A stretch of 64,000 bases of DNA from Lytechinus pictus (lineage: Eukaryota). Under the pieces are notes generated by a model. It did not search any database. It was not told the origin of the DNA and saw only the letters and a program-made list of their open reading frames with translations. The position numbers and the translations under genes were made by a program. The stretch lies in contig NC_087248.1 in assembly GCF_037042905.1 (NCBI RefSeq), positions 22,134,001 to 22,198,000 of the forward strand, read 5' to 3'. Of this stretch, positions 11,761 to 43,662 are shown piece after piece (position 1 is the first letter of the stretch; each line of letters begins with the position of its first letter).

Positions 11761-14244
11761 GGGGGGGGGGCAAAGCAAATCGAGGAAGTGAATGGTTTTG
11801 ATTATGGTGTTTGATTAACACCCTCCCACCCCTCCCCTTTCCTCATGCATGAGCGGGGAGAAAGCTTTATGATTTTTTTTCACGATACAATATTGAAGGA
11901 ATGGGGGTCTACGTACAATGCCCCCCCCCCCCCCTCACAAACACTGAAACCTTTGCAATGTCATAATTTAAATTCATGGTTCATGTTAGATTCCACAATA
12001 TTATCCTGAAAATTTACATACAAAAAATACAACCACGGAATGGGTGTACGGGTAGTCCCCGCCCTCGCCCCCAGAAAAAAATCTTCATTTTCATACAACG
12101 ATGGGACAGGGGAAAGGGTGCATCGGCATCGCCGTAATTAAGCGCTCCCCCCCCCCCCCTTCCCTACTTTCTGAGGACATATGGGCGATAGAGCCTTCCA
12201 AATGGAAAAGGTAATAGTTCTTGAAACGTCTTGGGCAGCGGGGGGGGGGCAGGGTGTTGGGTTTTTTCCCCCTTTTTTTGGTAATCACAGTCACATTCAG
12301 AGAAATACGTAATGATCTAATTTAGAACCGCTAATTATGCTCGAAAGTAATCTACCTAATGACACATTACATTACTTGCCCCGGGGAATGAGGGTTCAGG
12401 TGTCATGTGAACGCCATAGCCAAGAGAGTATCTGGTATGTAAACATGGTGTTTCCGAGCATGGATCAAAGAACATCGAATCATTTCGGTAAACATTGAAT
12501 ACTGTCACCGTGAATACCGGATAACAATAAGTGATATAGAGAAATTTTCGCTTTTTCGCAAACAGTGACCAAAAAATGTGTTTTTCGCTTGGAAATGTGA
12601 TTTTCCGTCAACTCAGCATTTGAGAGGCGTCGGTTTCTGAAAAAACATGTTGCCAAGATTGTAAACATTTTTTTTCAAATATTGCGTGGAAAATAGCGTT
12701 GGATACGGACATACTGGAGCTTTTCGACATGCATTCATCAGTTTAAATATCGCGTGAAATATAGTTTTTTGATACAAATTAAAAGCCCTTGGAACTTGAT
12801 ATAAGCAGGAAATTGCCAGTCAAGTTTTATTCCAGTGAGATTTATTAAAGGTGAGAGAAAATATGGACAATTCTCTGAGGCTTATACATGTAGGTATGTT
12901 ATTGTTGTTGAGAGTTTACAATGTGCCGAGTGGTGTTTCAATCGACGTGGAGAGGTTCCGTGGTCAAGTGATGTATTTGTGACCCACATGGTTTATGGAT
13001 CGAGTACATACCGTAATCATGGTAGTATTGATAATATATTTTTTATTATTTTATGGTACGTTAATGTACATAATCCACTCTCGAAAACAGAAGAATGAGG
13101 TCTCCTTTAAAAACATGTGAGCACAAAATAGGAGCTTCGTTATATCTGACCACCCCCTCCCCCCCAAAAAAAAAGGGGGGTGTCCAGATTTTTTTCCGAA
13201 GGGATGACCCATACTAGGGTTATTTTGATGGAAATGGGTAGCTAAAAGCGATTTTTTTTTTTTGTTCCAGAAAATTTTACTTAAGCTCTAAAGTAACAAA
13301 TATACATAAAAAATATATGTATTGTGCAAACAATTACACTTTTCGTTCCTCTTTGACTTTGGTTATAAGTGAATTATGTCCAATAAAGATTGATTATGTA
13401 TGAGGCTGTATGAGCAGTGTGATTTTCTTTTACATAAATTTTCATACCGGTCGCTCCATTTCTTTGTATTACCTAATGTTTTTATGACAATGGGAAAGGC
13501 TCACAATAACACTACCATGGAAGTACCATAGTGATACTACATGTACACCACATTGGATGTTGTAGTTTCTGGCAGCTTTCCTTCCGTTTTCCTTTCCAAA
13601 ATATATGTTTTAAACCGAAAATAACCTTACATTTTCTTTCTCTTTCCCTATGCGTATCTGTCTCTTTCTTTATAGAATTACGAAACTTTACACGACAGAC
13701 TTAAAATTTAAAAAAAATATATCATCCATTAGTCTCCATTTTAAATCAGTTTTGAGCTTGATCACTTTATAAAATGTATTTATTTATTTATTTATGCAAT
13801 TATGTACATTTAATTTAATTCTATTCAAATAACATTATACCATTGTACCTTTATCAGAAATGTTTTTGACTAAGTTATGTTAGGCTTACCATAACTTCTT
13901 CTTTCTTCCATATATACTTGTATGGTTTTTTAATTGATTTTTGTCCATAGTTGATGTTTATTTATGTTGTGAACTTGTAAAATACCATCCATTTGGCTGT
14001 ATATGACACATTGTTTTTTTTTTATATGTACACCATTGATCTGAATGTTAATTCTTTTTCTCTCCCTCCCTCTCTCTCTCTCTCTCTCTCTACCTACCTA
14101 CCTACCTATCTATTTCATTTTCCCTCCCTATATCCTCACTGCCCCCCCCCCTCCACAATCCCCGCTCTCCCCTACTCTCTCTTACTTTCTCTCTCCCACA
14201 ATTTCATTATATTTCACAGTATTTGAAGGATAAATGTTGTTTCC

Positions 14245-14356
14245 ATGGCGACCGTCATCCCATCAGCGCTAAGCATATTTCTTCTCGCCGCCATCTTCTC
14301 CAGGGCATCGGGTTGCGAATGTGCCACGGAACCGGCTTTCTGCTCTTTAGGATTTG
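14245..14356 (+). CDS. TIMP-like gene A, coding exon 1 (signal peptide + CECATEPAFC)
   Basis: MATVIPSALSIFLLAAIFSRASG|CECATEPAFCSLGF. Upstream acceptor TTTCACAG at 14219; phase-1 GT donor at 14357. Confidence 0.85.
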
Positions 14357-14400
14357 GTAATGAAAACTGTTTTTTTTTTTTTTTTACAAATGACATTAAG

Positions 14401-14619
14401 CACTGGCGGATCAAGGGGGGGGCAAAGCTGGCCCGTGCCCCCCCCCCCTCTTGAGAGGCGCAATTAAAATTAAAATTTGTAATGTAAACATGCCTTAAAA
14501 CAGAAGCGTGCCCCCCCCCCCCCTTTGAAAGTGAAGACTTTTTTTTCTTGCTTGTCAAATTTTTCCTCGGGAAAATGTGCCGCCCCCCCCCCTTTGGAAA
14601 ACTCCTGGATCCGCCCCTG
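14401..14619. mobile_element. hAT-like MITE in intron of TIMP-like gene A
   Basis: CACTGGCGGATC / GGATCCGCCCCTG, flanked by CATTAAG on both sides. Confidence 0.75.
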
Positions 14620-15055
14620 CATTAAGGATGGGGGAAGGGTGACTGTAAGACATGTCATAAGTGCGACGGAGGGAACATCGTACCCATCAAAAATTCGTTA
14701 GAAAATAATTTGATATTTTTTTTGCCCCGGCCCCCGACCAGATGTTCCTGCAGCTGCAGTATAGCATATAAACCTAAATGATCCCTTTTATAACTTAAGT
14801 ATGAACAGACCACTTGAACGCTTGTTAGAGGCGTAAATTATTGGAGACCACTGGGATAGCGCCATAAACCCTAATCCAACGAGGGGGCGTCCCATTATGT
14901 TTTTTTTTTTCAGATTGAACCTATAGTCATATGGATCAATTTGCTTAAATTGTTTTGTTCTAAAAGTACAAGGTGATAATACACCTGTTTACATGCATTT
15001 TGCTGGTTTTTATATTTCAGAAAGATAAACCTTTAATTTGTACAACCCTATATAG

Positions 15056-15259
15056 GTATCAGAGGAACGGTTACGAATATCCGAGGCAATGTCACTGCCG
15101 GCGATTTCATCACATACACTGTTCGGATAGCCGAAGTATACCGCAACTCAACAGACGGCATCTCCGTCGGCAATTCAATCGACATCATTACTATCAGTTC
15201 AGCCAAAGCTTGTGGTATACCCGACTTAAAAGAGAATGTGACGTATCTACTTTCTGGAG
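15056..15259 (+). CDS. TIMP-like gene A, coding exon 2 (NTR domain core)
   Basis: TAG|..|GTAAG, 204 bp, phase 1-1. Encodes GIRGTVTNIRGNVTAGDFITYTVRIAEVYRNSTDGISVGNSIDIITISSAKACGIPDLKENVTYLLSG. Confidence 0.85.
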
Positions 15260-15469
15260 GTAAGCCACAGGGCGTTTTTTTTTTCAAAGAATCGTGTCAA
15301 ATTGTTTGTTTTATTCCCTTGTTTTATTTTCTTCTGCATTCATAGTGAATACACAACTTGTCAAATTATAACAATGCACATTTCAAAACGAATATAGCGA
15401 ACAGTGAAAAATTGTACGCGTCATTAAAATCTCTCTCTCTTTCCCTCTTTCTTTCTCCCTCTCCTCACC

Positions 15470-15505
<36 letters not shown>

Positions 15506-15616
15506 GATGACCCCCTTCCTCTATTATCCTCGCCTCTCCCCCCCCCCCCCACTTTTTCTTTTTATATTTCCCATTCTCCTCCTCCTACCTCAACCTTATC
15601 CCTTCATCACACTCAG

Positions 15617-15804
15617 GTGTCGTGTTCGGTAGCTATCATCTGCATACATGCAATTCTGTGGTCGTCGAATACAGCGACTACGTCGACAACAAGGATCACC
15701 ATGAAGATGTCGACATTCCTTGCTCAGCGACATCGTCGTCGATGGCCACCAGTGCCGTAGTCGTCGTCTTTGTCGCTCTACTCGACCATGTTTTCTTCCA
15801 CTGA
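15617..15804 (+). CDS. TIMP-like gene A, coding exon 3 (end of NTR domain + GPI-like signal); 167 aa total
   Basis: Polypyrimidine tract + CAG acceptor. Encodes GVVFGSYHLHTCNSVVVEYSDYVDNKDHHEDVDIPCSATSSSMATSAVVVVFVALLDHVFFH*. Confidence 0.85.
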
Positions 15805-15928
15805 CGCACAAAGATTATCCTTAAACAGGAGATGACAGATGTCGACTTTATAGGCTTTGTATTTTTATTGGTAAGGCATATACACCTCACTTACGAAAGG
15901 CTGTTATCAGTATGGAAGATGCATCCGA

Positions 15929-16065
15929 GGTGTGTGGCCGAGTGGTCTTAGGCGCTTGACTGGACATTTGAAAGTCTGGGGTTCGATCCCTGAACACGGT
16001 ACCTATGCCCGTGAGCAAGGCATTTAATCGACAATATTCTCTGTTATCCTGCCTTTGAATAAATG
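15929..16065 (+). mobile_element. tRNA-derived SINE fragment
   Basis: A box TGGCCGAGTGG and B box GGTTCGATCCC followed by SINE body. Confidence 0.6.
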
Positions 16066-16185
16066 GAAATGATATATGCATTCTTGTAAACTCGGTGTAT
16101 TTACTAATATTGTTCAAAAATCCTACGGTTGATACGAAGGACATTTTGAACTGCTTTCTAATTGATGAGATGGCGAGAAGCTTCA

Positions 16186-16461
16186 TCTTGCCAATTCGAC
16201 ATGATATACTTTTCTTGTTGACTTAGTAAAATTATTAATCTATGTTGCCAAGTCGACTTCTAAATAAATACTTTTTGTCGTGACACAGAAAGGTCTCTTG
16301 CCATGTCGACTTCTACGAAGTTACATGTCATCATGGCAAAGGAAAGTCTCTTGCCATGTCAACTTCTACAAAGTTACAAACACGTCTCGCCATGTCGAAT
16401 TTTGAAAGTGTTAAATGTCGTCATGTCGACAAAATAATTCCTGCAAAGTCGACTTGGCAAG
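16186..16461. mobile_element. GTCGAC-rich MITE
   Basis: Ends TCTTGCCAATTCGAC / GTCGACTTGGCAAGA with internal TTGCCATGTCGACTT repeats. Confidence 0.5.
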
Positions 16462-17952
16462 ATATCTCCTCATCTCGACTTTCGCACGTTGTGTACCTGC
16501 TTTTAGTGCCATTCTGCACTGCAAATCTTTTAGTCTTTAATGGGCATGTCTTATAGGATTTTCTTTTCAATGTGGAAGATGACTTGTGTTACATACTGTT
16601 TTTATCGTGATTTTGGGATAGGAAAATAATATACGACTACTATACATAACATTACATTATAGACATTTCAAAAACATGGGAAATTGAAATAAAATTTAGC
16701 AGTGGCAATGAAGCAGATAGAATACTGTCTATATAATATTATGTCTATGTGCTTAGCCTCGAAATAAACTCATGTGATCACGCCATGTAAATAGATAAGG
16801 TTAAAATCTTAATTAGTTTTATTCCATGCGATCTAACATTTCAACTGTTTATCTATATACTTTTTAATAAAATTATGTTATGTATTTGCGATATTTGTGA
16901 TAATGATACAAGTAACAACTTAGCTTTTTATCATTTGACGCATTCTTACCACTCTAACAAAAGAAAATGCAGCATACGGCCTCATTTATTTTCGTTATTG
17001 TGTCATTTGCATAATATTTGTTAATGTTCATTTTGTTATTGGTAAAAATGAAAATAAATTATTTGAAAAAAAAATCATATTCAGCTTACATTCATTGTAC
17101 ATTTTGTGTGGTTTTAAAATTCAAACTCATAATAAGCTTGATCATATATGTTGCAACATCTTTGTGTGCTCATTTTGTAATGTTTTTATGTAAAGTCACT
17201 CATTCTGTATATTATATTAGCAATACTGTCATTATTAACATTTATGGATGAAAACGTACATGGCACCCTTACATTCATGTGACGTCACTCTTTTGAAGAT
17301 CGAAGAATTAAAATAACAATTTCCGAGACATATTCAATAGAATGTTTTTGTATATTGTTGTATTTTATTGAGTGTCCACCATGCGCACTAAGATTTAAAA
17401 ACAACCCATAAAGTGACCAAGGTGCAAAATATCACTTTTTTCTTCTTGTTTGCACCAGAAAATATCCGGTTTGCATCCTGAATAAAAGCACCTTCCATGG
17501 AGCATCTTTTTTTTATGTTGTTGCGTTAAAAATCGTACCTTGTTTTGAAAAGATACAACTCTGCACCCCTAACAGGGTGCAAAATGTCACTTACTGCCTC
17601 CTGAAGTTTCCTTTGACTGAAAAGTTGCATCCCAACAGGATTTTTAACAGTTTTGTTTATTTGAAAGGTGCAAAATTGCATCTTATTTCTTACTATGTGT
17701 ATTTATTTAGATGAATATTAAGAAAGATAATTTTCAAAAGAGGAAAATGTTTGAAGAATCATCTCGTGGAGCTATTGTGTAGGGGATGTGGCTAGGGGGG
17801 GGCAGGGGTAAAGTGCCCACCCGGACGGAATGGTGATAACCCTTTTTGTGTGTTTGTTTGTCCAAAAAAAATCGTGCTCCTCCTGACATGTCTGACAGGA
17901 ACGCTAATGGTATTTTTAAGAGGCAAATTAAATGTCCACCCTCTTCCTACAA

Positions 17953-18414
17953 TAGCGAGTTTTCACAATCGCGACGGGGACGGATTCTACAACATTGTAA
18001 ATCTATTGAAAATGCTCGTCATATCACAATGAACAGCTGAGAGGTCTTTGTCGAAAATTTGTGAACCGGCAGCAGATTGCCGTAGGATTCTGAGCTGACG
18101 AAAAATTGCAAATATGTTGTTTGTCCAGAGTCCTGGTGGGTGTTTCATAAAGCTGTTCGTGAGTTAAGAGCGACTTTAAGAACGACTGGTGATCCTTTCT
18201 TGTGGTATATGGTAGATTCATTGGCAATGGTCTAACACGTAAGAAAGGATCGCCAGTCGTTCTTAAAGTCGCTCTTAACTTACGAACAGCTTTATGAAAC
18301 GGATCCCAGGACGAAACTGCTGCTTTGATTCACCAATTTTCGACAAAGACTTCTTTGACAATAGATTTTCTATGTTGTAGAACACGTTCCCGTTGCGATT
18401 GCGAAAATTCCCTA
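17953..18414. mobile_element. Harbinger-like MITE carrying a nested MITE
   Basis: TIRs TAGCGAGTTTTCACAATCGC / GCGATTGCGAAAATTCCCTA. Related copies at about 22385-22640 (inverted) and 24457-24720. Confidence 0.7.
18136..18306. mobile_element. Palindromic MITE (CWG target)
   Basis: GTTTCATAAAGCTGTTCGT..AGAGCGACTTTAAGAACGAC and its inverse, with CTG/CAG flanks. The empty site GAGTCCAGGACG is seen in the sister copy at about 24637. Confidence 0.8.
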
Positions 18415-18499
18415 ATGTCATAAGGGGAAAAACATACAACCGAACACAAAGCGAAGTCTAAGAAAAAAGAGAAAGTACGGAAACAATTCTGTTTCTTCA

Positions 18500-18810
18500 A
18501 TAGCCGTGGTGTAGTGGGTCTGACTCTTGCCTTGTAATCAGAGGGTCGCGGGTTCGAATCTGACCATGGCCTTTGGCAAAATTCGCCCTTCTCCATCCAG
18601 GAGCTAAATGAGTATCCGGTAGGATGTGAAAATCACTGAAGCTTGTCCAGCATTGTATGCGCCTGGTTAGTGGCTGGATGGAATACTCCCCAGGGAGTGA
18701 ATGGTTTGCAATCGTTGTGTGTCGGACACTTTTGAATCCGATGGCTAGGATGATAACAAAGTACGCGCTTAGATACCAACAATTCTTAAGTTCGATCGTT
18801 ATAAACAAAA
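18500..18810 (+). mobile_element. tRNA-derived SINE
   Basis: Head GCCGTGGTGTAGTGG..GGTTCGAATC, SINE core, ATT-rich tail. Confidence 0.7.
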
Positions 18811-21097
18811 TCCAGATTATTATCATTATTCATTCAGATTTCGAAATAATGTTTTCCAGTCGACAAATCCCATTTGGGGGATTGATAATCACTATTTCCT
18901 TTTCTTTCTAATAAGCTATCTCTTACAATAACATTGAAGACTTAATATATATTGAATATTAATGACGAAGACACGTGACAAAGTTTGACAATAGAACACA
19001 GTCACTTTTTATTTTACTCGATAACGAAAGGGTAAAACTCTGGTCGGGTGATACGTGAGCATAATTATGCTTCCGGATTTCCTTTATACAACACAGATAT
19101 GATATATGTTCACGTATGTCATAAAAAAAATAACACACATCGGCTTGTGACATACATGTACAGCGCAAGACTCTACTACATTGTGTTAATTTAGTAGCCT
19201 TACTTTCAGTCTCAAAATACATGTGTTTTTTTAATTCTTAGAACAAATTATCATTTGTATCGATTAATATACAGTTTCGAAATGAACTATGATTCTATTT
19301 AATCAAAGCCTCTTGCAACTGTGGTTTCGATATATAACTATCTCGTTGGGGCGTGATCATATTCAAGTACCAAGTACGTATAGGTCTAAGTGTACAGAGC
19401 GTTGGAAGTATATCACGCGTCGCTTTGACTTAAGACTTTTATCAAAAAAGCCATCGCACGCGAGGCAATACAAAATACTATTCAACGCGAGGAATTGTGA
19501 TTCTCAGGCAAACAATGATAGTGATGTATTATGAACCATTATCAACAATAGGCAATGCAGCAGTATCATTTCAATAAAACCTCAATCGGACCTGCTACCT
19601 ACTTGCTATAATATCTCAAAAAATATGCTTTTCCAACAAAATATAACGGGCAGGCATGGGATATATTGCTTTTTAAAGAGGTAGTGGACATCGAAACTGA
19701 ATGCGATCCATTATTCTGATGTATGTATGGCTTCGCCACCACAATTTTAGCAGTGTGTATCGAGGTACGTATAAATGTTATGTGTAGATTTGATCCGGTT
19801 CGGTGTGGTAAGTGGGCACCCGTCATAAGTAAGTGGCGTGCATTTTCTGGCGCAGACATGGCATGCAGAAGGCACCATAAAAGGCACAATTTGGCGGATG
19901 TGTAGAATTGTGTGGAATATTGAATTGTATTCGTGCTTTTGATATGCGAATGAACCGCGTATGCAATTTCATTTTAGGGAAGTAACGAAGAATATATTAT
20001 TTATGGCCTTGGTTATATTTCAACATTGTCTGTGCATGAGCAATACCATCATTACATTATTCACATTAGTGACAGTTAGCCCATTAGTCACCTTGAAGCA
20101 CATTTTGGTGCATTTCGGGTACATCTAATTATGAATAACATTTGAAATCAATTCCATTATATTATACTGTTACTTATGTACGCCATGTCTTTACAACACA
20201 TTAATGAATTAAAAGTAGCTGAATGATAACCACATGATAACAACGGGGCTGTCTTTCGAACATTTGATTACCATGACTACAGTGATAGTAACGGCGCAAA
20301 AATGAAATGAAAAAAATGTATATATAAAATATTTTCTAATGTACCTCAAATATATCCCAATCAAGTTCAAGTCCAAGTTCAAGTTTATTCAAACCAATCA
20401 ATAAAATAGTAGGCCATATATGAAAATAGTTTGACAAAAAAAAATCAAACAACATGAATAATTATCACTTCTGATATGACCACTACTGTTACCCATTGTG
20501 AGGTCAGATAATTTTTCTTTTAGATAGACTTTTTAATCTTGTTTATATATAGTTCTAACGCTATACGGTTAGTCATTTTGCAGTGATTTGCCCGGCATCT
20601 TTGCTTTTTGGGATTATTCATACCTGTTCAGCTACTTTGTATTCATTTCTTTTCTTTTTTATTTGGTGTGTCCTTCAGTTTATTCAATTGAAATTTCAAA
20701 GACGAAAAACAATACTTTTGTAATTCTGAAACATCACTACGTGCAACCCTTACAATTTACTTTCATATGATTCTATATTTTTCCTATGTATTTTTTTCAT
20801 TGTTGATTATAAAACCCTTTTACTTTACTTGTATCTCAATTTCAACCCCCTTAATTAAATTAACCTGAATTTGAGAAAGAGCAAATTAAGTTTTGATCGG
20901 ATTAATTATACTTTATCATGAAATAGTCTCGAATTATTGATTTTTTTAAATAAAAGCTTTTATTAAGTACCTTTCTTGTAACGTCTTCTTTATAATGTAC
21001 ATGTATATCATGAAATTCTTATTGTCTTTGATTCCTCTTCAATGGTAATTTTGTTTTTCAATCCAGAATCAGTCAGAATTTCACCGGTCAAGTAAAC

Positions 21098-21230
21098 ATG
21101 GCAAAGTCTACCTTCATTGCTTCTATGTTCCTCGTTTTTGGTATCATCTGTGGTGTCATCTTGCAGCCGATATCAGGATGCTCCTGCGGACCCGGATATA
21201 AAGACCCAGCTTTTTGCTCCTTCGATTTCG
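21098..21230 (+). CDS. TIMP-like gene B, coding exon 1 (signal peptide + CSCGPGYKDPAFC)
   Basis: MAKSTFIASMFLVFGIICGVILQPISG|CSCGPGYKDPAFCSFDF. Phase-1 donor GTAAT at 21231, at the same position as in gene A. Confidence 0.85.
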
Positions 21231-21479
21231 GTAATAATCGTAAATTTTCACGAGGATCTCGAAACTTGTTGAGAAATACATGGTATAGCTTGGTGTATAA
21301 AAAGTTATACTTCAGTACTTACCGACGCATCAACATGTCATTATATTAACGAGATCATCAGATCATTTGACGACAATGATAGCCTTATAATATCGAATTT
21401 ATTGTGTGTTTTTTTAAATTCTATTAATGTTTTTATTATAAATCATCAAGAATCACAATATTTACAACATACTGGCTTA

Positions 21480-21628
21480 ACAATTTTTTTTTTGCTTGTC
21501 AATTTTTTGGGGGTACGAAATATCCTTTATTTTGGGCTTAAAACCTTCTTTTTTTTTTTTGCTTGTCAAAATTTTCCTCCGAAAAATTTGCCCCCCCCCC
21601 CCTTTGGAAAATCCTGGATCCGCCCCTG
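21480..21628. mobile_element. Partial hAT-like MITE
   Basis: TTGCTTGTCAA repeats and right end GGATCCGCCCCTG, same family as 14401-14619. Confidence 0.6.
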
Positions 21629-21976
21629 ATCTTGAATAATTATGTAGTTGATTTGCGTTCATCTGCAATCCAACTTTCTTGCAACGCCTCCATACGACTG
21701 ATTTGGAGGACTTGTGCTTGATTTGCATTTGAACCTATTACTGAGTGCCATCTAATTAGGAGCCCGTTTCATGAAGAGTTATAACTATTGTAACTTTGTC
21801 ATCAATGACAACTACCATGGTAACAAGGCTCAGCAGTCAATCACAATAAAGGTTTCCATGGAAGTTACAATAATGGCAAATTCACAATAGTTGTAAGTCC
21901 TTATGATAACATATCCCAGATCGTGATTTTAACATATTTAACCTAAACTGGTCTTAAACTCCTCTTTTTTTAACAG

Positions 21977-22174
21977 GTATCAACGGAACCGTGGTTGATA
22001 TTAATGGAAACGTCACTTTGCAAGAAGATCTGGTATACAGCGTCAATGTACATGACGTATACCGAAACACATCGGAGGGAATATTTCTCAACGAAATCCT
22101 GGATATAAGAACATCAGCAACCTCCTGCGGCTTCCACTATTTTGAAAGGGACAAGGTCTACCTGATTGCGGGAG
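21977..22174 (+). CDS. TIMP-like gene B, coding exon 2
   Basis: CAG|..|GTATGT, 198 bp, phase 1-1. Encodes GINGTVVDINGNVTLQEDLVYSVNVHDVYRNTSEGIFLNEILDIRTSATSCGFHYFERDKVYLIAG, which aligns with gene A exon 2. Confidence 0.85.
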
Positions 22175-23178
22175 GTATGTCTGACATATCACCAATCGAT
22201 GTTGAATTTTCATTAATCACACAGGAGTTTCCGAAATGAAGACGGATTATAGGTGTGGTGTGGGATTATATGAAAATGCTGCCTTAATAATGCACACTGC
22301 TCACTCGTTTTTCTACCAGTACTTACCGTCGCAGTTTCGAAAATTAGGTGTTTTTGTTCTGCGAATAGAGTAAATTTACTGTCAGTTGCCCTTTATGACA
22401 AAGCATGGCCAAGAAGCCTTTGTCGAAAAATTGGTGAATCAAAACAGCAATTAAGTCCTTGACTATAGACAAATGACGTATTTGCAATATTTTGTTAGCT
22501 CCGAAGCTTAGGACGACTGCTGTTTAACGATTAACCAATTTTCGACAAAGACTTCTTGTTGTTCTTTGTCATGACGGGCATTTGACGAGTCATTCACTGT
22601 TTTTTAATCGACCGTACGCCGCTGTGCAAAAACTCCCTCATCGGTCGAATACAGGTAGTTCGTTTCAGGGAGATGTAAACACCCATTAATTCCAAAACAG
22701 TTCTGACATAACCAAATAAAAAAGGACCACAAGTGTTTGTACATGTATGTACAAATAAATTATGTTGATAAATAAATAGGCCTAATGTCATCGAATGAGC
22801 AAAATACGCGAGGTACCGTAATCTAAAAAAGGGTATTTTCTGACGGACAGGCTTTTACAGATAAAAATCGGAAGGACCCCAAGAAAAGCACAGCTTGCGA
22901 GGATGGGGACGTGTACAAAGAATAAAAAAAAAGACGCTTAAATTTCATAACTATCGATTGATGTATTATACTTGTATCATTGCGGTTGTTTAATGTTTTC
23001 ATTATCATTATAATGATAGTTATTATTATTATTAGGACCAATATTTGTTACTCTTAACCTTGTAAATAATATTATTGTCATGTATATTATTATCACCTAT
23101 GCTAGTATTGTCATCATCATCATATCTGTCACAAAATTATCATCTATATCATTATTTGTCTCCTGTACTATATTTCAG

Positions 23179-23345
23179 AATTTTCTGGAGTCTACACTCT
23201 CCATTCGTGTAATGCCATCGTCATCGGATACAATGATGACGGGGAGCCGGATAGGGATGTCGACATACCGTGCTCGACGACGTCGGTAACCATCGCCTCA
23301 TCGGTCGTCGTCATATCATTCATATTCACTTTCCTATTCGTATGA
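23179..23345 (+). CDS. TIMP-like gene B, coding exon 3 (GPI-like signal); 165 aa total
   Basis: TTTCAG acceptor. Encodes EFSGVYTLHSCNAIVIGYNDDGEPDRDVDIPCSTTSVTIASSVVVISFIFTFLFV*, sharing LHxCN and DVDIPCS with gene A. AATAAA at about 23458. Confidence 0.85.
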
Positions 23346-24071
23346 ACTCATGAAAGCATGAATTTTTAACACGCACAGATCTACAGAGAGATCTAAAGCG
23401 TTCCTCAATGTTTGAGCCCTGCGCGGCTCTATGCGATCCGATGCGACGCGATTTTTTAATAAATCGCCTCTTGCATTAAATGTGAAAGTTCCAAGAAGTA
23501 AGATTTGTTCATGTTAAGTTCGGCATAATATCAGGAATAATAAAATCATGATTTTACTTTGCGGCAAGCCCTGTGGTCGGAGTAAGGTCTACACAGCTTC
23601 AAGTCGCAGCCGATGAAGACGACATTACGATTTGGATTTGAATTTGCTTTAATTCCTACAGGGATGCTCGAACTAGACTGAATTTCGATCTCAGTAATCC
23701 TACCTCTAATCGCTAAGATTAGAATGTCCATATCAAATTTTATTACATTTTTTTTCAAATTCGGATCGCAGCGAATCGCAGTGTCCGCCGGGCTTTAGAG
23801 CCCCCTGACTTCATCCATAAAGATACGGCCTTGTCCGGCTACAATGTTTCTAAGCGCTTAGGCCGGCTGTATCAAGCTAAATAATTTCATTTTTATTATA
23901 TTTACAGACAATAAATACCCCGCCGGGCAGTGTTCAGTATTGTCAATTCTTATGCACATTTTCAACTCCCTTGGGAGTATTCCAGCGAGTCGCCATGTAT
24001 AGATGTGAGGCAAATGTACTGTGCATGACAATATGCAATGACTGTATCATTCTGCTGCGTACCCAACGCCT

Positions 24072-24243
24072 AGGGCCGTTTCATAATGCTGTTCGTAAGA
24101 TAAGAGCGACTTTAAGAACGACCGGTGAACCTTTCTCACGCGCTAAACCATCGCCAATGAATATACCATTTACCACAAGAAAGGATCACCAGTCGTTCTT
24201 AAAGTCGTTCTTAACTAACGAACAGCTTTATGAAACATCCACC
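24072..24243. mobile_element. Palindromic MITE (same family as 18136-18306)
   Basis: Same TIR sequences. Confidence 0.75.
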
Positions 24244-24456
24244 TGGATGGAGAGTGGCAAATACAGAGTGTGGTAAATGACTAGTATAAGAACGCTAAAG
24301 GTGTTATGATTGGACCCCCCTCCCTCATAAGACTTACAAAACAAAAACAGCTAAACGACTGTTTAATCAGGAATATTATGTATTCATGCTGGCCGGAGAT
24401 GAAACATGACCCTATATAAGGGGGATAAAAAGCAGAAATTTAATTTGAGTAAATCA

Positions 24457-24720
24457 ATAGGGGGTTTTCGCAGTGGGACGCAGAACGTTTTCAAGAACAT
24501 AGAAGTTGCATTGAAAGATGCCCGCCAATGACAATGAACGACTGGGTGGTCTTTGTCGAAAATTGGTGAACTGGAACAGCAGATTCGTAATAAGTTACGA
24601 AACCGACGAAACAATGCAAATATGTCGTTTGTCCAGAGTCCAGGACGAAACTGTTGCTTTGATTCACCAATTTTCGATAAAGACTTCTCGGTCGCGCTTT
24701 GTCATGAACGTCATTTGACA
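24457..24720. mobile_element. Harbinger-like MITE copy (family of 17953-18414)
   Basis: Shared GTCTTTGTCGAAAATTGGTGAA..TTCACCAATTTTCGA core. Confidence 0.65.
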
Positions 24721-25693
24721 ATATATTTTCTGTGTTTTTTTACTTCTCCCTACGTCGCAGAGTGATCAACAACTCTCCATTCATCAGGCAGACCAACAAT
24801 CTGCGGGGTTCGAATTCTTTCACCAGTTTACTGCGCTCGATCTTCATTTTTTTTTTTTTTCATTCATTGAAATTCTTGCATCGTATTGTACCCATGCACG
24901 GTCAACCATGCATGCCTTGCGAGAGGACGAAGCGTTGTCAAGTAGTGACGGAGTTGCTAGGAAACAATGAGATAGGCATGTTTGGTATTAAAGGAGCTGG
25001 ATGTTTTGTAATACTCCTTGGTGAAGTGTGGCACTTTCTTCGTAGTTACGGAAACGACAGAGATGAGGGCAGATCATATCTTTGCGGAAGGCTTTCCTAT
25101 CCCGGACGAGTGTACGTCGGGAGAGGTATTAAGGCCAGGGATTCGCACTGCTTTGTCAGGCAAGCTGTTTTGAAGTGGGATTTTGATAACCATTGACAGG
25201 TCGTGATGCATAACACTGGCGTGACATGAAAGTCAAGACGGACCGTGCAAGGACCAAGTTAAGAAGATAAAGATGTGAGTGACTAATTGTTATTTTATTC
25301 ATTGCGATCGGCAAGTGAAGGAGGATAGTGAAAAACGAGAGAAGATTGTGAAATTATTATTTTGTATGTCTATTATATAAAGGCTTGATCCCACTGCACT
25401 TACGGATGCAAAGCGGACGTGAAACGTAAAAAGAAATCTTGCCATCCGTTGAAAAACGCTATGCATCCGCTGCGTACTCATTGCATACGTGTTGCATACG
25501 CTCTATATCCATCGAGCGTCCGTCCACTGTGTTTTCATTTGTTCACCAATTGTATTCCTTTTCTGGAGCGGATGAAAATGGATGGAGCCAGCCCGAAATT
25601 GAGCCTTGCTCATCAAGGACTCACTGCAGCTATCGTAGCCTCTACGATTATGTGTGAAGTTTGAAAAATGCTTTAAATACATATATATATATA

Positions 25694-37051: not shown

Positions 37052-38914
37052 TCACGTGGATGGCGTCGAAGTCGCTTCTTTGCCGTGTTTTTTATATAGA
37101 AATACCGCTAAGGCACTGAGCGCGACGACGACGAGGAGGAAGACGACGAACAACCCCGCGATCAGCCCCCAGTTCGGATTCCCGCGTAATCGGTCGGTTT
37201 TGTTCGGCGGTGGCAGTTCTTGATCTGTAAAAATGTTTGTCTCATCAATCGGAATGCCAATACTGTCACCACTACCCACCTCCATGACATCAGTTGCACT
37301 TGTAGATGAGGTTACAGAAACATTTACAAGGTTATTCGTTGAGTTTTCAACGGGATGGGTTGCGTTTAGGATAATATTTGCATTTGTTTCTTCCTGAGTT
37401 TCAGTAGGAGTCAGGTCGTTACCAGACATTTCTGGAGGCTGTGTCTTGGTTACCTGTGTCGTAGATGCTTCGGTAGGTGCGCTGGTTTCAGTTGGAAGTG
37501 AAATGTCTACTAGGCCGGTAGTCTCGCTCTCGGGAACTTCTATCTCGTTGTCCGACGAAAGCGATGAAACCGAACTTAAACTGGAAAATATATCAGATGA
37601 AACCGACGACGACGACGAAGACTCGTAAATCACAATATTTCCATCGTTGACCACAAGAGGCACTTGGGGAATTGTAGGTCGTTCCGTTATTGCTTTTGAT
37701 GTCGGTTTCATTGTCGTTGCCTTTGTTGTAGGTATTGTGGTGGTTGGAGGTGATGATGTGGTTGAAAGCGTTGTCGTTGCGAGAGTGGTAGGCGCTGTTG
37801 TTGCCTTTGCTGATGTGGTAGTTGCTCGGACTTTCGTCACGATGTTTGCTGTGGCTATCCCGCGTGGTGAGGGTGCTTCGGTTGCAGCTTCCTGGACATC
37901 GGATGTGCTAATCCTGTTGGACTGCACCCAAAGGAGACCCACTGCCGATCCTGAATAACTGTAATCCTTCTGGGTGACCTCACATTTAACCAGAGCATAG
38001 TCGTCTTCCATGGTGACGGCCTCGATCAGGAGTCTCTGACCTCCACGGAGGTAGGTGAATCGCGATTCTCGCCCGTCGATGAGTTCGTTGTTGATGTACC
38101 ACTGGTACGCAAGATTAGGCATTCTCTCTGTGATACAGGCAAATGTGAAAGCTTGGCCAACCTCCACGCTGGCGACTACAGGTCGAAGTAAGACACCCAG
38201 GCTGCTACGAAGTGGGGTCAGGGAACATGTTATCGGTTGCTCCAATGCAGAGTTGGTAGCCACGCACGTGAAACGGACGTCCGAATCTTCTTCTGTCAAC
38301 GTCATGGAATAATGGACAATCGGGTCACCTTTGTGGTGGCGCCCTCTCTTCGTGATCAACCGCGTCGTTCCTCGAACCCAGGACAACGTCGCCGGCGGAT
38401 CACCCCCACGGGACTCACAAGACAATGTGATGTTATCGCCGACATTGGCTCTCTGGATGGGATCAATAGCGCACTTTGGGTAGCCACGATCCGGTGGTCG
38501 AACTACCCTAACCTTGGCAACTTGACTGTAGTAATTAAAGTTAAGAAAGAACACACAGGCATACCTGCCTTCGTCGGCCTTCGAAACGTTGGTGATCTGT
38601 AGATGGTACTCGCCTCTTTCAACATTGCCTGTCACTTCAAATCTGCTCAGTTGTTCTTCTCCAATCTGGCCGTAGGGGTTCATCCTTCGGTTTAAGCTGA
38701 TGTAGGAAGCGGTATCAAGGTTCTGCCAGTAGAGAGGAATATCGGCTTGGTTGTTGACAGCGCAGTGAAGTACAACGGTCTCCCCACCGATGGCTGTTAT
38801 ACTTTCTGGTTGTTCCCGAAACGATATGGCTCCTACACTGGTAACGGCCACCACGAGCCACATCCAGGATAAAATCATGTTTGAATGGATCGTTATTCCT
38901 TTTAATATTGCCAT
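37052..38914 (-). CDS. Intronless type I membrane IgSF protein: signal peptide, 3 Ig domains (CADM/nectin/KIRREL-like), Ser/Thr mucin stalk, TM, short tail
   Basis: 620-aa ORF with Ig motifs LHC..W..DEGRYAC, LSCESRGGDPPATLSW..FTC and FAC..YQW..VKC, a Thr-rich stalk, and TM WGLIAGLFVVFLLVVVALSALAVFL followed by YKKH. Confidence 0.92.
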   Translation of the reverse strand: MAILKGITIHSNMILSWMWLVVAVTSVGAISFREQPESITAIGGETVVLHCAVNNQADIPLYWQNLDTASYISLNRRMNPYGQIGEEQLSRFEVTGNVERGEYHLQITNVSKADEGRYACVFFLNFNYYSQVAKVRVVRPPDRGYPKCAIDPIQRANVGDNITLSCESRGGDPPATLSWVRGTTRLITKRGRHHKGDPIVHYSMTLTEEDSDVRFTCVATNSALEQPITCSLTPLRSSLGVLLRPVVASVEVGQAFTFACITERMPNLAYQWYINNELIDGRESRFTYLRGGQRLLIEAVTMEDDYALVKCEVTQKDYSYSGSAVGLLWVQSNRISTSDVQEAATEAPSPRGIATANIVTKVRATTTSAKATTAPTTLATTTLSTTSSPPTTTIPTTKATTMKPTSKAITERPTIPQVPLVVNDGNIVIYESSSSSSVSSDIFSSLSSVSSLSSDNEIEVPESETTGLVDISLPTETSAPTEASTTQVTKTQPPEMSGNDLTPTETQEETNANIILNATHPVENSTNNLVNVSVTSSTSATDVMEVGSGDSIGIPIDETNIFTDQELPPPNKTDRLRGNPNWGLIAGLFVVFLLVVVALSALAVFLYKKHGKEATSTPST

Positions 38915-42253: not shown

Positions 42254-42445
42254 NNNNNNNNNNNNNNNNNNNNNNNNNNNNNNNNNNNNNNNNNNNNNNN
42301 NNNNNNNNNNNNNNNNNNNNNNNNNNNNNNNNNNNNNNNNNNNNNNNNNNNNNNNNNNNNNNNNNNNNNNNNNNNNNNNNNNNNNNNNNNNNNNNNNNNN
42401 NNNNNNNNNNNNNNNNNNNNNNNNNNNNNNNNNNNNNNNNNNNNN
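42254..42445. other. Assembly gap (N run)
   Basis: Run of N. Confidence 1.
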
Positions 42446-43662
42446 NTCCTTTTTCTTCTGTTATTATATGAAATCATAACTGTTTCATTTTTGTATACAT
42501 GTGTGAATGATATGTCTCCCTTGTAATGAAATAAGTAGCAGCAATGAACATAACAATACTCTAGATCAAGTTGCCATTCCAATTATTTTGGTTCTTGAAG
42601 GAAAAAAATTTGATAAATCTAATTTTATATAGTAAAATACAAAAAAACAAGTGGGGATATGACATCATCAATTTGCTCATTGAATATTCATGAAGACATG
42701 CCTAGAACTGTTTCACCGAATAATAGAAATCTTTAAATTGCCATAACTTTTTTGTATTCCTTGTCCGAATTTGATTAATTTTCAGTGTTTTGTTTGTCTG
42801 ATTTTTCTTTATCTGTTCAAATATTATTTTCTGTCTGGAGTACCCCCTAAAGGTGGATTTCCATTACGTTATTACACCTGATCCAGTTCACCGAACGCCA
42901 GTGGCGTAATGAGCCCCCAAAAATGAGGGGTCCAGACATGGCAAATTTACTAAAAATCTGCGATCGAGCAAGAAAATAGACCTCTCTAATAATGAAAATA
43001 TGATTTTCGTGATGTTTTTTTTTCTTCATAATATTCAGAAAATGATATATTATCGCCGTTCATCTTTTCTTTTTCTCTCCTTGACTCCCCTTTTTTCTTT
43101 ATGGTGACAATTTGTTGGGGTCCATGGCCCCCAATTCCCCCACCTCCTGGTCATTAAAAAGGGCTTTTTTCCGTGCCATTCCCTTCAACAGTGACCCACT
43201 TTACATCACAGAAGAAAATTAAATACCCCCCCTCCAAAAAAAAAGTTCAGTTCATACGCTACTTTCCAGACAACATCATCCGGTGGAAGCCTTTGTCTTC
43301 CGGTCAGTTCCTGGGAGGTAAATAAAAAATGAGTTATCTTCACCAATATATAGGTGATTATCTAATAAGTCGTTTAACATCTTGATTTCTTCATAATAAA
43401 TGATTTGGAAATTGGTCAATACTGGTCGACGTCTTATTCAGATACATGCGTCTGCGTTATGATGATAAGCCCCAAAGCGAAATATCAGTAAAATCAAGCT
43501 AGGAGACGTTTAATTTCTATTAATCTGTATATCCATTTCTTAAAAAAGACACCTTTAGATATGATTCGAAGGCCCAAGGGCATAAACCTAACATGTTAAA
43601 AAATAATTACATCACAATCGTAGATGAAAGGAAATTTATTCATAACGATTCATAATTATGTG

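What the first reader, a model, noticed from the sequence alone, without database searches (positions are those of the whole stretch)
14245..23345. Tandem pair of single-domain TIMP-like genes ending in a GPI-anchor-like signal (candidate membrane-tethered metalloproteinase inhibitors)
Seen: two paralogous genes invisible as long ORFs, each with three coding exons and identical phase-1 intron positions, encoding 167 and 165 aa. Each has a signal peptide ending SG, a mature N-terminus Cys-X-Cys, and exactly six mature-domain Cys in TIMP N-domain order (CxC, AFC, xCG, xCN, PC). Immediately after the sixth Cys comes a small-residue site (SAT or STT), a Ser/Thr spacer and a hydrophobic C-terminus with little or no polar tail. 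Known: canonical TIMPs are soluble two-domain proteins whose Cys1 amine chelates the protease zinc; the N-domain alone inhibits; echinoderms have expanded TIMP families, including tensilin. Inference: here the C-domain is replaced by a GPI signal, giving cell-surface N-TIMPs, an architecture I do not know as characterised in natural TIMPs.
Basis: partly seen in the sequence, partly recalled or inferred. Interest (0 to 1): 0.85.

Follow-up and report, generated by a model that had tools for sequence, protein, structure and literature searches.

The report
Membrane-tethered single-domain TIMP-like gene pair
Two neighbouring sea-urchin genes each encode a small protein that looks like the inhibitory half of a TIMP metalloproteinase inhibitor, with a lipid-anchor-type hydrophobic tail where the second half would be. 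No natural TIMP of this design is described in the papers I could search.

Summary
The window is Lytechinus pictus, contig C4. It holds two paralogous three-exon genes of 167 aa (g1) and 165 aa (g2). All introns are GT-AG and phase 1.

Each protein has:
- a signal peptide ending in Gly;
- Cys-X-Cys at the predicted mature N-terminus;
- six Cys;
- a small-residue site right after Cys6;
- a Ser/Thr spacer and a 13-15 residue hydrophobic C-terminus with at most one residue after it.

The pair, its exon structure and both stop codons are conserved in L. variegatus and S. purpuratus. Tail-bearing relatives also occur in Diadema.

TIMP ancestry rests on three results. g2 passes Pfam TIMP, and g1 passes Pfam NTR. 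A profile built from tail-bearing members alone hits only TIMP-1 and TIMP-3 N-domains in the PDB, aligned from Cys1. Both introns match those of a canonical sea-star TIMP gene in place and phase. The predicted fold is NTR.

Three things were not shown. No RNA reads could be laid. No GPI predictor was available, so GPI versus a C-terminal transmembrane helix stays open. Inhibitory activity is untested.

The newest RefSeq model fuses the two genes through a non-canonical CT-AG junction and is probably an artefact.

Verdict: a new variant of a known kind, of moderately high interest.

The parts
14245..14356 (+). g1 exon 1. It holds the start codon, a 23-aa signal peptide (14245-14313), the mature N-terminus Cys-Glu-Cys (14314-14322) and the third Cys. 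It ends in a phase-1 GT donor.
   Evidence: Spliced translation. The same exon is in L. variegatus. P0031 residues 1-164 are identical to g1.
15056..15259 (+). g1 exon 2, the core of the NTR/OB fold, with the fourth Cys (xCG) and three N-glycosylation sequons.
   Evidence: This exon alone hits Pfam NTR at 28 bits against a cut-off of 21.9. It is AG/GT bounded.
15617..15804 (+). g1 exon 3. It holds Cys5, an acidic loop and Cys6 (15721-15723). The tail runs 15724-15801: a small-residue site SAT, a Ser/Thr spacer and a 15-aa hydrophobic end. The stop is at 15802-15804.
   Evidence: The stop position is conserved in L. variegatus and S. purpuratus.
16058..16063 (+). First AATAAA downstream of the g1 stop, 254 nt after it. 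Candidate poly(A) signal for a separate g1 transcript.
   Evidence: Pattern scan. Its use has not been verified.
21098..21230 (+). g2 exon 1, 133 nt. It holds a 27-aa signal peptide (21098-21178) and the mature N-terminus Cys-Ser-Cys-Gly-Pro, with TIMP-like spacing from Cys1 to Cys13. It ends in a phase-1 donor.
   Evidence: A canonical sea-star TIMP has an exon 1 of the same length and phase.
21977..22174 (+). g2 exon 2, the NTR core.
   Evidence: The whole g2 protein hits Pfam TIMP at 28.1 bits against a cut-off of 23.1.
23179..23345 (+). g2 exon 3. It holds Cys5 and Cys6 (23271-23273). The tail runs 23274-23342: STT, a spacer and a 13-aa hydrophobic C-terminus with nothing after it. The stop is at 23343-23345.
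   Evidence: The L. variegatus ortholog P0042 ends identically.
23458..23463 (+). First AATAAA downstream of the g2 stop, 113 nt after it.
   Evidence: Its use has not been verified.
15795..21066 (+). The stretch that RefSeq model XP_063954058.1 (P0031, 340 aa) treats as an intron, fusing g1 to g2. It starts CT and ends AG.
   Evidence: An exhaustive search of junctions found only this one that reproduces P0031.

Best explanation
g1 and g2 are two separate, tandemly duplicated genes of an echinoid family of single-domain TIMP-like proteins.

Shown:
- Each gene has three exons.
- The product carries a cleavable-looking signal peptide and an NTR/OB-fold domain.
- Cys-X-Cys lies at the predicted mature N-terminus, followed by the six Cys of a TIMP N-domain.
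- The protein ends in a short uncharged spacer and a 13-15 residue hydrophobic C-terminus with no cytoplasmic tail.

Inferred:
- After signal-peptide removal, Cys1 is the free N-terminus.
- The C-terminal hydrophobic peptide is exchanged in the ER for a GPI anchor, at the Ser or Ala one or two residues after Cys6. Less likely, it stays as a membrane helix.
- The glycosylated N-TIMP-like domain then sits on the outer face of the plasma membrane.
- There it would block pericellular metzincins (MMP, ADAM or astacin type) by the TIMP wedge mechanism. In that mechanism the Cys1 amine and carbonyl bind the catalytic zinc and residue 2 enters the S1' pocket.

g2 has Ser2, Pro5 and TIMP spacing, and is the better candidate inhibitor. 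g1 has Glu2 and a segment three residues shorter between Cys3 and the third Cys, so it may have a shifted or weaker specificity.
For: Gene models:
- The reading frames, GT-AG introns and phases are confirmed.
- RefSeq models with the same structure and the same C-terminus exist in L. variegatus: P0001 (170 aa) and P0042 (167 aa), called as two genes on L001.
- S. purpuratus has P0027 (162 aa), with the g2 ortholog downstream.
- The older L. pictus model P0005 is g2 alone.
- Exons are more conserved than the DNA around them. dN/dS is 0.66 for g1 and 0.33 for g2.

TIMP kinship:
- Pfam TIMP scores 28.1 bits for g2 and 24.5 for the g1 ortholog, against a cut-off of 23.1. Both alignments start at the CxC.
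- A profile of 15 tail-bearing proteins alone hits only TIMP-1 and TIMP-3 N-domains in the PDB (E about 5e-5), from chain residue 1. The next hit is meteorin at E 0.1.
- The six Cys are invariant in an alignment that includes two-domain echinoderm TIMPs.
- Intron 1 is at the identical codon and phase as in the Acanthaster TIMP gene. Intron 2 has the same phase and lies one codon away.

Fold:
- The AlphaFold2 core has block-mean pLDDT mostly 80-90.
- Foldseek and VIA-align place it with NTR modules, TIMPs included, at Z 8.5-10.6.

Tail:
- In 13 of the 15 family members examined, a small-residue triplet lies 4-9 residues before a hydrophobic core of 12-17 aa. At most one residue follows that core.
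- The tail is kept in Lytechinus, Strongylocentrotus and Diadema although its sequence drifts.
- The window holds no TIMP C-domain-like coding sequence.
Against: - No transcript evidence was obtained.
- No GPI predictor could be run. The best 19-residue hydropathy windows score 2.1 to 2.5 (Kyte-Doolittle), which is also compatible with a transmembrane helix.
- g1 itself falls just under the Pfam TIMP cut-off (22.2 bits) and scores higher on the generic NTR model (33.2 bits).
- The fold search does not separate TIMPs from complement C345C, PCOLCE or meteorin NTR modules.
- dN/dS for g1 is only mildly below 1, and it rests on 23 substitutions.
- Glu at position 2 in g1, and Asp, Lys or Val in relatives, is unlike the Thr or Ser of vertebrate TIMPs.
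- The newest RefSeq model joins the two genes.
Confidence: 0.6

Rival explanations
1. The genes and the domain are as above, but the hydrophobic C-terminus is not exchanged for GPI. It stays as a single C-terminal transmembrane helix, giving a type I protein with essentially no cytoplasmic tail. The TIMP-like domain would still be displayed on the cell surface.
For: From Cys6 to the end, g2 has 23 uncharged residues. The best 19-residue Kyte-Doolittle windows score 2.1 (g1) and 2.5 (g2), above the usual TM threshold. AlphaFold2 draws residues 150-164 as a helix. One relative, P0034, has a 26-residue uncharged end with no clear small-residue site.
Against: The strongly hydrophobic cores are only 13-15 residues long. 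g1 has Asp-His inside its core. No basic residues follow the segment, and nothing lies beyond it. A small-residue triplet sits at the usual distance upstream in most members. A sister subfamily (P0043, P0046) has a textbook Asp-Asn-Ser site, a spacer and a hydrophobic end. These are heuristics, not a trained predictor.
Confidence: 0.2
2. The proteins are membrane-tethered NTR-module proteins that do not inhibit proteases. The TIMP-like domain instead binds matrix or a receptor at the cell surface. Precedents are tensilin-type collagen binding, PCOLCE-type enhancement, and meteorin- or sFRP-type signalling.
For: g1 scores better on the generic NTR model than on TIMP. Structural matches to non-inhibitory NTR modules are as good as those to TIMPs. 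Position 2 is variable and often charged across the family. The echinoderm TIMP review stresses wide divergence and non-inhibitory relatives such as tensilin.
Against: All members keep Cys at the first residue after the predicted signal cleavage, and all keep CxC. These features matter only for the inhibitory wedge. g2 keeps Ser2, Pro5 and the TIMP spacing from Cys1 to Cys13. The tail-only profile finds TIMPs and no other NTR class at significant E-values.
Confidence: 0.3
3. g1 and g2 are one gene, as in RefSeq XP_063954058.1 (340 aa). The product would carry two NTR domains joined by the g1 tail, 11 residues of g2 leader and the g2 signal peptide.
For: The model exists in the newest L. pictus annotation, and its two halves are identical to g1 and g2. 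S. purpuratus has genuine two-NTR proteins in this family, P0003 and P0032.
Against: The only junction that reproduces the model is a CT-AG intron from 15795 to 21066. The linker would consist of two hydrophobic targeting peptides, unlike the Thr/Pro-rich mucin-like linker of the true two-domain proteins. L. variegatus and the older L. pictus annotation call the genes separately. AATAAA signals follow the g1 stop.
Confidence: 0.06
4. A further downstream exon exists, so the hydrophobic stretch is an internal TM segment followed by a cytoplasmic domain.
For: In g2 a GTATGA that overlaps the last codon and the stop (23340) resembles a splice donor.
Against: g1 exon 3 has no donor-like site. No annotation in any of the four genera extends the proteins. 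The stop positions are conserved.
Confidence: 0.04

Closest known systems
Vertebrate TIMP-1 to TIMP-4 (MEROPS I35, Pfam PF00965), in particular their isolated N-domains (N-TIMPs)
   Same: A signal peptide followed directly by Cys-X-Cys. Six Cys in the same order. The OB/NTR fold. In g2, Ser2, Pro5 and the spacing from Cys1 to Cys13 equal those of TIMP-2. The xCG loop is present. An N-glycosylation sequon in the AB-loop region aligns with the N-Q-T sequon of TIMP-1 in the profile alignment. The family profile aligns from chain residue 1 of N-TIMP-1 and N-TIMP-3.
   Different: There is no C-terminal domain. A GPI-signal-like hydrophobic tail starts one residue after Cys6. The HPQ motif is absent. 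g1 has Glu at position 2 and a shorter N-terminal segment. Identity to TIMPs in the structure searches is about 16-26%.
Canonical echinoderm two-domain TIMPs, clustered inside the synapsin gene
   Same: Same phylum. Intron 1 is identical in position and phase, and intron 2 is equivalent. They are detectable sequence relatives: P0015 and P0021.
   Different: The canonical genes have four coding exons and 10-12 Cys, and they are secreted. In L. pictus they lie on C3 at 58.38-58.75 Mb, inside the synapsin gene. The tail family lies elsewhere, on C4, C12 and C20. A 2010 survey stated that sea urchins have no TIMP outside the synapsin locus (PMC2825198).
Single-domain invertebrate TIMPs and NTR proteins (nematode, mussel, cnidarian, crinoid)
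   Same: One NTR domain with six Cys behind a signal peptide. Examples found here are P0013, P0020, P0023 and P0024.
   Different: These proteins end a few polar residues after the last Cys and have no hydrophobic tail. They are predicted to be soluble.
Engineered TIMP-1-GPI and other membrane-tethered designer TIMPs
   Same: The same design idea: a TIMP inhibitory domain fixed to the cell surface by a GPI anchor so that it acts on pericellular proteases (PMC3338742, PMC6359047, PMC9409782).
   Different: Those are laboratory fusions of full-length human TIMP-1 to a foreign GPI signal. The proteins here are natural and N-domain only, and they are conserved across echinoid genera.
RECK
   Same: From general knowledge, RECK is a natural GPI-anchored cell-surface inhibitor of MMPs. 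The proposed role here is analogous.
   Different: RECK is an unrelated fold (Kazal-like and Cys-knot motifs), a large protein with a different mechanism. No homology is implied, and none was tested here.
Tensilin (holothurian TIMP-like stiffening factor)
   Same: An echinoderm TIMP-derived protein with a non-canonical role (PMC8467561).
   Different: Tensilin is a secreted collagen-fibril-binding protein with no membrane tail.

Membership tests
TIMP (Pfam PF00965, MEROPS I35) | Match to the family HMM above the curated cut-off of 23.1 bits | tested here: met
   g2 scores 28.1 bits. Its L. variegatus ortholog scores 24.3. The g1 ortholog P0001 scores 24.5. g1 itself (residues 1-164) scores 22.2, just under the cut-off. 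The feature is met for g2 and borderline for g1.
TIMP (Pfam PF00965, MEROPS I35) | Cys1 is the first residue of the mature protein, within a Cys-X-Cys motif | tested here: met
   CxC directly follows an n-h-c signal sequence with small or neutral residues at positions -3 and -1 (A-S-G and I-S-G), in all 21 aligned relatives. The judgement used the -3/-1 rule only. No SignalP run or protein sequencing was done.
TIMP (Pfam PF00965, MEROPS I35) | Six N-domain Cys at conserved positions, with the 1-4, 2-5, 3-6 disulfide pattern | tested here: inconclusive
   The six positions are invariant in alignment A1 with true TIMPs. Disulfide connectivity could not be read, because no coordinates are exposed.
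TIMP (Pfam PF00965, MEROPS I35) | OB/NTR fold of the N-domain | tested here: met
   The AlphaFold2 models match NTR modules, including TIMP-1, TIMP-2 and TIMP-3. Foldseek gives E of 1e-6 to 1e-4, and VIA gives Z 8.5-8.9 for TIMPs and up to 10.6 for C345C. The fold alone does not single out TIMPs.
TIMP (Pfam PF00965, MEROPS I35) | C-terminal domain with six further Cys (the vertebrate two-domain architecture) | tested here: not met
   The protein ends 23-26 residues after Cys6, and the window holds no C-domain-like exon. Single-domain TIMPs are accepted family members in invertebrates (PMC4860685), so this excludes the canonical architecture rather than the family.
TIMP (Pfam PF00965, MEROPS I35) | Shared gene structure with canonical TIMP genes | tested here: met
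   The Acanthaster TIMP gene has exons of 133, 207, 125 and 282 nt, with introns 1 and 2 in phase 1. In g1 and g2, intron 1 is at the identical codon. Intron 2 is one codon away in the same phase.
TIMP (Pfam PF00965, MEROPS I35) | Nested in a synapsin intron (typical of the ancestral locus, not obligatory) | tested here: not met
   Synapsin and the canonical TIMP cluster lie on C3 at 58.4-58.8 Mb. The window is on C4 at 22.13-22.20 Mb.
TIMP (Pfam PF00965, MEROPS I35) | Tight-binding inhibition of metzincin proteases | not testable with these tools
   This needs recombinant protein and enzyme assays. A complex prediction was not possible, because all MMP catalytic domains in this genome are split by introns and so have no usable reference.
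NTR module, non-TIMP type (Pfam PF01759) | HMM match above 21.9 bits, and a position at the C-terminus of a multidomain protein | tested here: inconclusive
   g1 scores 33.2 bits and passes. g2 scores 18.3 bits and fails. The positional feature is not met, because the module is N-terminal and alone.
GPI-anchored protein | An N-terminal signal peptide, plus a C-terminal signal made of a small-residue site (omega to omega+2), a 5-10 residue spacer, and a hydrophobic end with no cytoplasmic tail | tested here: met
   In g1 the site is S142 or A143, the spacer is 6-7 residues, the core is 15 aa and one residue follows. In g2 the site is S143, the spacer is 7 residues, the core is 13 aa and nothing follows. 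The same plan is seen in 13 of 15 relatives. This is a hand-written rule check only.
GPI-anchored protein | Positive call by a trained predictor (NetGPI, PredGPI, big-PI) and experimental PI-PLC release | not testable with these tools

The most novel reading that the evidence does not exclude
Echinoids possess a natural family of GPI-anchored N-TIMPs. It has at least four loci in L. pictus. In S. purpuratus it includes versions on mucin-like stalks and versions with two NTR domains. These proteins would act as cell-surface, pericellular metalloproteinase inhibitors. That would make them a natural counterpart of the engineered TIMP-GPI biologics and a functional analogue of RECK, evolved by loss of the TIMP C-domain.
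Probability: 0.4. Interest if true: 0.72.

Novelty: new variant of a known kind. Interest (0 to 1): 0.6.

Why it matters
TIMPs are textbook soluble inhibitors. Fixing them to the cell surface with a GPI anchor has so far been a protein-engineering strategy for targeting membrane-type MMPs. If sea urchins do this naturally, three things follow.

- It gives an evolutionary precedent for that design.
- It provides a compact scaffold of about 120 residues that has already been selected for function close to a membrane.
- It adds a candidate regulator of pericellular proteolysis in a model embryo whose skeleton formation, ingression and hatching depend on metalloproteinases.

It also corrects the published view that sea urchins have no TIMP genes outside the synapsin locus. 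And it flags a RefSeq gene-fusion model that should be split.

Tried and rejected
RNA read evidence:
- The look-up of sequencing runs showed four runs guessed to be RNA that hold 11-17% of the sampled words of 14100-23500, but only 7% of the g2 region. This fits a g1 mRNA but is unverified, so I do not count it.

Database searches that gave little:
- The word-indexed protein searches found only the ortholog and close echinoid relatives.
- The exact g2 protein and P0005 are on no assembled contig in the collection.
- The protein-atlas look-up gave only generic TIMP, NTR and NtA neighbours.

Fold searches (Foldseek PDB, Swiss-Prot AFDB, VIA-align) confirm an NTR fold but cannot discriminate TIMP from C345C, PCOLCE or meteorin. 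I therefore rest the TIMP assignment on sequence profiles and intron positions.

Other steps:
- A family tree groups all tail-bearing proteins together, but with weak support (43/66), so a single origin of the tail is only suggested.
- I considered a complex prediction with an MMP. It was not run, because every MMP catalytic domain in this genome is interrupted by introns and has no contiguous reference.
- ARAGORN finds no tRNA gene in 13000-25000.
- The Brew and Nagase review could not be fetched.
- The earlier-findings index held nothing relevant.


Full report
**1. Observation**

- g1: 14245-14356, 15056-15259 and 15617-15804, 504 nt, 167 aa.
- g2: 21098-21230, 21977-22174 and 23179-23345, 498 nt, 165 aa.

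All four introns are GT...AG, and all interrupt a codon after its first base (phase 1). The two proteins are 41% identical (E 2e-39), and the window holds no third copy.

Every detail in the finding holds.
- The signal peptides end in Ser-Gly.
- Cys-X-Cys comes next.
- There are exactly six Cys in the mature part, in the contexts CxC, AFC, xCG, xCN and PC.
- SAT (g1) or STT (g2) follows directly after the sixth Cys, then a Ser/Thr stretch and a hydrophobic end.

Each protein also carries three N-glycosylation sequons, as expected for a secretory-pathway protein.

**2. Which genome, and are the models real?**

The window is Lytechinus pictus, contig C4, 22,134,001-22,198,000.

The g1 ortholog in L. 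variegatus is RefSeq LOC121413117 (P0001, 170 aa, 93% identical over exon 2). It has the same three exons and the same C-terminus. The next called gene on that locus, 6 kb downstream, is the g2 ortholog LOC121412772 (P0042, 167 aa, 90% identical). I rebuilt both L. variegatus coding sequences. The splice sites and both stop codons are conserved.

S. purpuratus has the same tandem pair: P0027, with the g2 ortholog about 5 kb downstream.

Between the two Lytechinus species the exons differ at about 5-6% of sites (23 and 32 substitutions). Aligned intronic and intergenic blocks are 72-88% identical. dN/dS is 0.66 for g1 and 0.33 for g2. Over the domain alone it is 0.48 and 0.21. This is purifying selection resting on few changes.

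I could not add read-level evidence. No run on record as RNA holds the region.

**3. A conflicting annotation**

The newest L. pictus RefSeq model, XP_063954058.1 (P0031, 340 aa), is made of three pieces. These are g1 residues 1-164, then 11 residues translated from the g2 leader, then all of g2.

An exhaustive junction search shows that only one join in the window reproduces it. That join runs from 15794 to 21067, an intron that starts CT. The resulting linker would be the g1 hydrophobic tail followed by the g2 signal peptide.

True two-domain members of the family in S. purpuratus (P0003, P0032) are different. They join their NTR domains by a Thr/Pro-rich mucin-like linker. The older L. pictus model (P0005, 165 aa, g2 alone) and both L. 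variegatus models keep the genes apart. AATAAA signals lie 254 nt after the g1 stop and 113 nt after the g2 stop. I read the fusion as an annotation artefact, with about 6% odds that it is real.

P0031 was still useful. It gave exact references for g2 (residues 176-340) and for g1 minus its last three residues.

**4. What the domain is**

Pfam places both proteins in the NTR/TIMP clan.
- g2: TIMP 28.1 bits (cut-off 23.1); NTR 18.3 bits (cut-off 21.9).
- g1: NTR 33.2 bits; TIMP 22.2 bits.
- g1 ortholog P0001: TIMP 24.5 bits.

All TIMP alignments begin at the CxC.

An exhaustive phmmer search of 1.84 billion representatives found 25 relatives. They fall into four groups:
- tail-bearing echinoid proteins;
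- two-domain 'metalloproteinase inhibitor-like' proteins of a sea star and a brittle star;
- a single-domain crinoid TIMP-3-like protein;
- single-domain NTR proteins of a mussel and a nematode.

To avoid circularity I built a profile from 15 tail-bearing proteins alone (A2). Against all PDB sequences it finds only TIMP-1 and TIMP-3 N-domains (E about 5e-5), aligned from chain residue 1. The next hit is meteorin at E 0.1.

The six Cys are invariant in an alignment that includes the true TIMPs.

Gene structure gives independent support. The canonical Acanthaster TIMP gene (P0015) lies inside synapsin on the opposite strand, as TIMP genes do from flies to humans (PMC2825198). It has coding exons of 133, 207, 125 and 282 nt, with introns 1 and 2 in phase 1. 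Its intron 1 falls in the codon after ...C-x-x-x-F, exactly as in g1 and g2. Its intron 2 falls one codon from theirs, in the same phase. The g2 exon 1 is also 133 nt.

AlphaFold2 models have mean pLDDT of 70 and 68, with block means mostly 80-90 across the core. They show an OB-type beta barrel. Foldseek and VIA-align match it to NTR modules: complement C345C (Z up to 10.6), meteorin, PCOLCE, and TIMP-1, -2 and -3 (Z 8.5-8.9). These scores are effectively tied. The fold therefore confirms the superfamily. The TIMP assignment rests on the profiles, the N-terminal position of CxC and the introns.

**5. What replaces the C-domain**

tBLASTn with the C-domains of two echinoderm TIMPs finds nothing in the 64 kb (all E above 1). 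The full TIMPs match only exon 2 of g1 and g2 with E below 0.01.

g1 exon 3 contains no donor-like GT. In g2 the only donor-like site overlaps the stop codon.

Both proteins therefore end 23-26 residues after Cys6. A rule check on 15 family members gave the following.
- g1: a small triplet at S142 or A143, a 6-7 residue Ser/Thr spacer, a 15-residue hydrophobic core that contains Asp-His, and one final His.
- g2: S143-T-T, a 7-residue spacer, and a 13-residue core that is the C-terminus.

The g1 and g2 orthologs, P0004, P0028, P0032 and the Diadema protein follow the same plan. A more distant subfamily (P0043, P0046) has an acidic stalk, then Asp-Asn-Ser, a spacer and a hydrophobic end. That is a classic GPI-signal layout.

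No basic 'stop-transfer' residues follow the hydrophobic segment, except Lys-Lys-Phe or Lys-Met-Phe in that subfamily.

This anatomy is what GPI signals look like. However, 19-residue hydropathy windows (2.1-2.5) would also allow a membrane helix, and I had no trained predictor. My odds are about 0.6-0.65 for GPI and about 0.2 for a C-terminal TM helix. Either way the domain is tethered outside the cell.

The tail is kept from Diadema to Lytechinus while its sequence drifts, as targeting peptides do. By general knowledge that split is more than 200 million years old.

**6. Family and genome context**

In L. pictus the tail family has loci on C4 (this window, two genes), on C12 at 26.35 and 30.42 Mb, and on C20 at 16.07 Mb. 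At both C12 loci and in the window the hits fall in the same three parts; the C20 locus gave only an exon-2-type hit.

The canonical TIMPs form a dense cluster on C3 at 58.38-58.75 Mb on the minus strand. That cluster lies inside the plus-strand synapsin gene.

A maximum-likelihood tree groups all tail-bearing proteins apart from soluble and two-domain relatives, but with weak support. A single origin of the tail is suggested, not shown.

All named tail-bearing hits are echinoids: Lytechinus, Strongylocentrotus and Diadema. Absence elsewhere is not established.

**7. Mechanism proposed**

Shown: the architecture and its conservation.

Inferred, in order:
1. The signal peptide is cleaved before Cys1, following the -3/-1 rule.
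2. The C-terminal peptide is replaced by GPI, one or two residues after Cys6.
3. The glycosylated domain sits close to the outer membrane leaflet. In some S. purpuratus paralogs it stands on a mucin-like stalk.
4. The domain blocks pericellular metzincins by the TIMP wedge. The Cys1 amine and carbonyl bind the zinc, and residue 2 sits in the S1' pocket.

Echinoderms have MMPs whose C-termini resemble those of GPI-anchored MT-MMPs (PMC8467561), which would be natural neighbours.

g2 keeps Ser2, Pro5 and the Cys1-Cys13 spacing of TIMP-2. g1 has Glu2 and a segment three residues shorter, so its specificity may differ or be weaker. A non-inhibitory role, such as binding matrix or a receptor, remains a serious rival (about 0.3).

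**8. Comparison and novelty**

The literature I could search mentions GPI-anchored TIMPs only as engineered fusions. Two reviews of TIMP diversity and the echinoderm MMP/TIMP review describe single-domain and divergent TIMPs, but none with a membrane anchor. A synapsin-locus survey stated that sea urchins lack independent TIMPs. The genes themselves are in RefSeq as 'uncharacterized protein', and in UniProt as 'NTR domain-containing'.

I class this as a new variant of a known kind: a TIMP-family N-domain with a natural membrane tether.

Confidence by claim:
- gene models: about 0.9;
- TIMP-family homology: about 0.85;
- membrane tethering: about 0.8;
- GPI specifically: about 0.6;
- protease inhibition: about 0.5.

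Noticed in passing
window 15795-21066, with P0031: RefSeq XP_063954058.1 (L. pictus LOC129258307, 340 aa) fuses g1 and g2. The only junction that reproduces it is a non-canonical CT-AG intron. This looks like an annotation merge that should be split.
   Followed up: yes
G000 contig C3, 58.38-58.80 Mb (outside the window): At least 16 TIMP-HMM exon hits lie on the minus strand, spread through the plus-strand synapsin gene. This is the canonical nested TIMP cluster of L. pictus. The Acanthaster TIMP P0015 (L002) is likewise nested in synapsin.
   Followed up: partly
P0003, P0032 and P0006 (S. purpuratus): Family variants exist with two NTR domains joined by a Thr/Pro-rich mucin-like linker, or with one NTR domain on a roughly 30-residue mucin-like stalk. 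All end in the same kind of hydrophobic tail.
   Followed up: partly
P0043, P0045, P0046 and P0018 (Lytechinus, Strongylocentrotus): A more distant subfamily has a strongly acidic (Glu/Asp-rich) spacer between the NTR domain and a textbook GPI-like signal. One member is misnamed 'histone chaperone ASF1-like', presumably because of the acidic run.
   Followed up: no
window 37052-38914, minus strand: An uninterrupted 620-aa ORF with several immunoglobulin domains (Ig_3, I-set, V-set). It looks like an intronless Ig-superfamily gene or a large exon.
   Followed up: no
window 48236-48970, minus strand: A 244-aa ORF with weak sulfotransferase-domain matches (24 bits).
   Followed up: no
window 18135-18301 and 24073-24248: A roughly 165-bp element matches the L. 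variegatus locus in both orientations (L001 about 19062-19227). It appears to be a short palindromic or foldback repeat, present in several copies near the genes.
   Followed up: no
window 15925-16010 and 18500-18570: By eye these stretches resemble tRNA-derived SINE heads (...GGTTCGAATC...). ARAGORN calls no tRNA there.
   Followed up: partly
window 24872-25693: This block is 86% identical to L. variegatus, above the typical 72-82% of neighbouring non-coding DNA. The overlapping ORF 24732-25196 has no Pfam match.
   Followed up: no
window 42254-42446: A run of 193 N, either an assembly gap or masked sequence. I left it untouched.
   Followed up: no
P0007, P0009, P0010, P0016 and P0017: These short database 'proteins' are exon 2 of family members read through into the following intron. 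Two of them share the ending ...GCKYTDIAPIII. They are gene-calling artefacts, not isoforms.
   Followed up: partly
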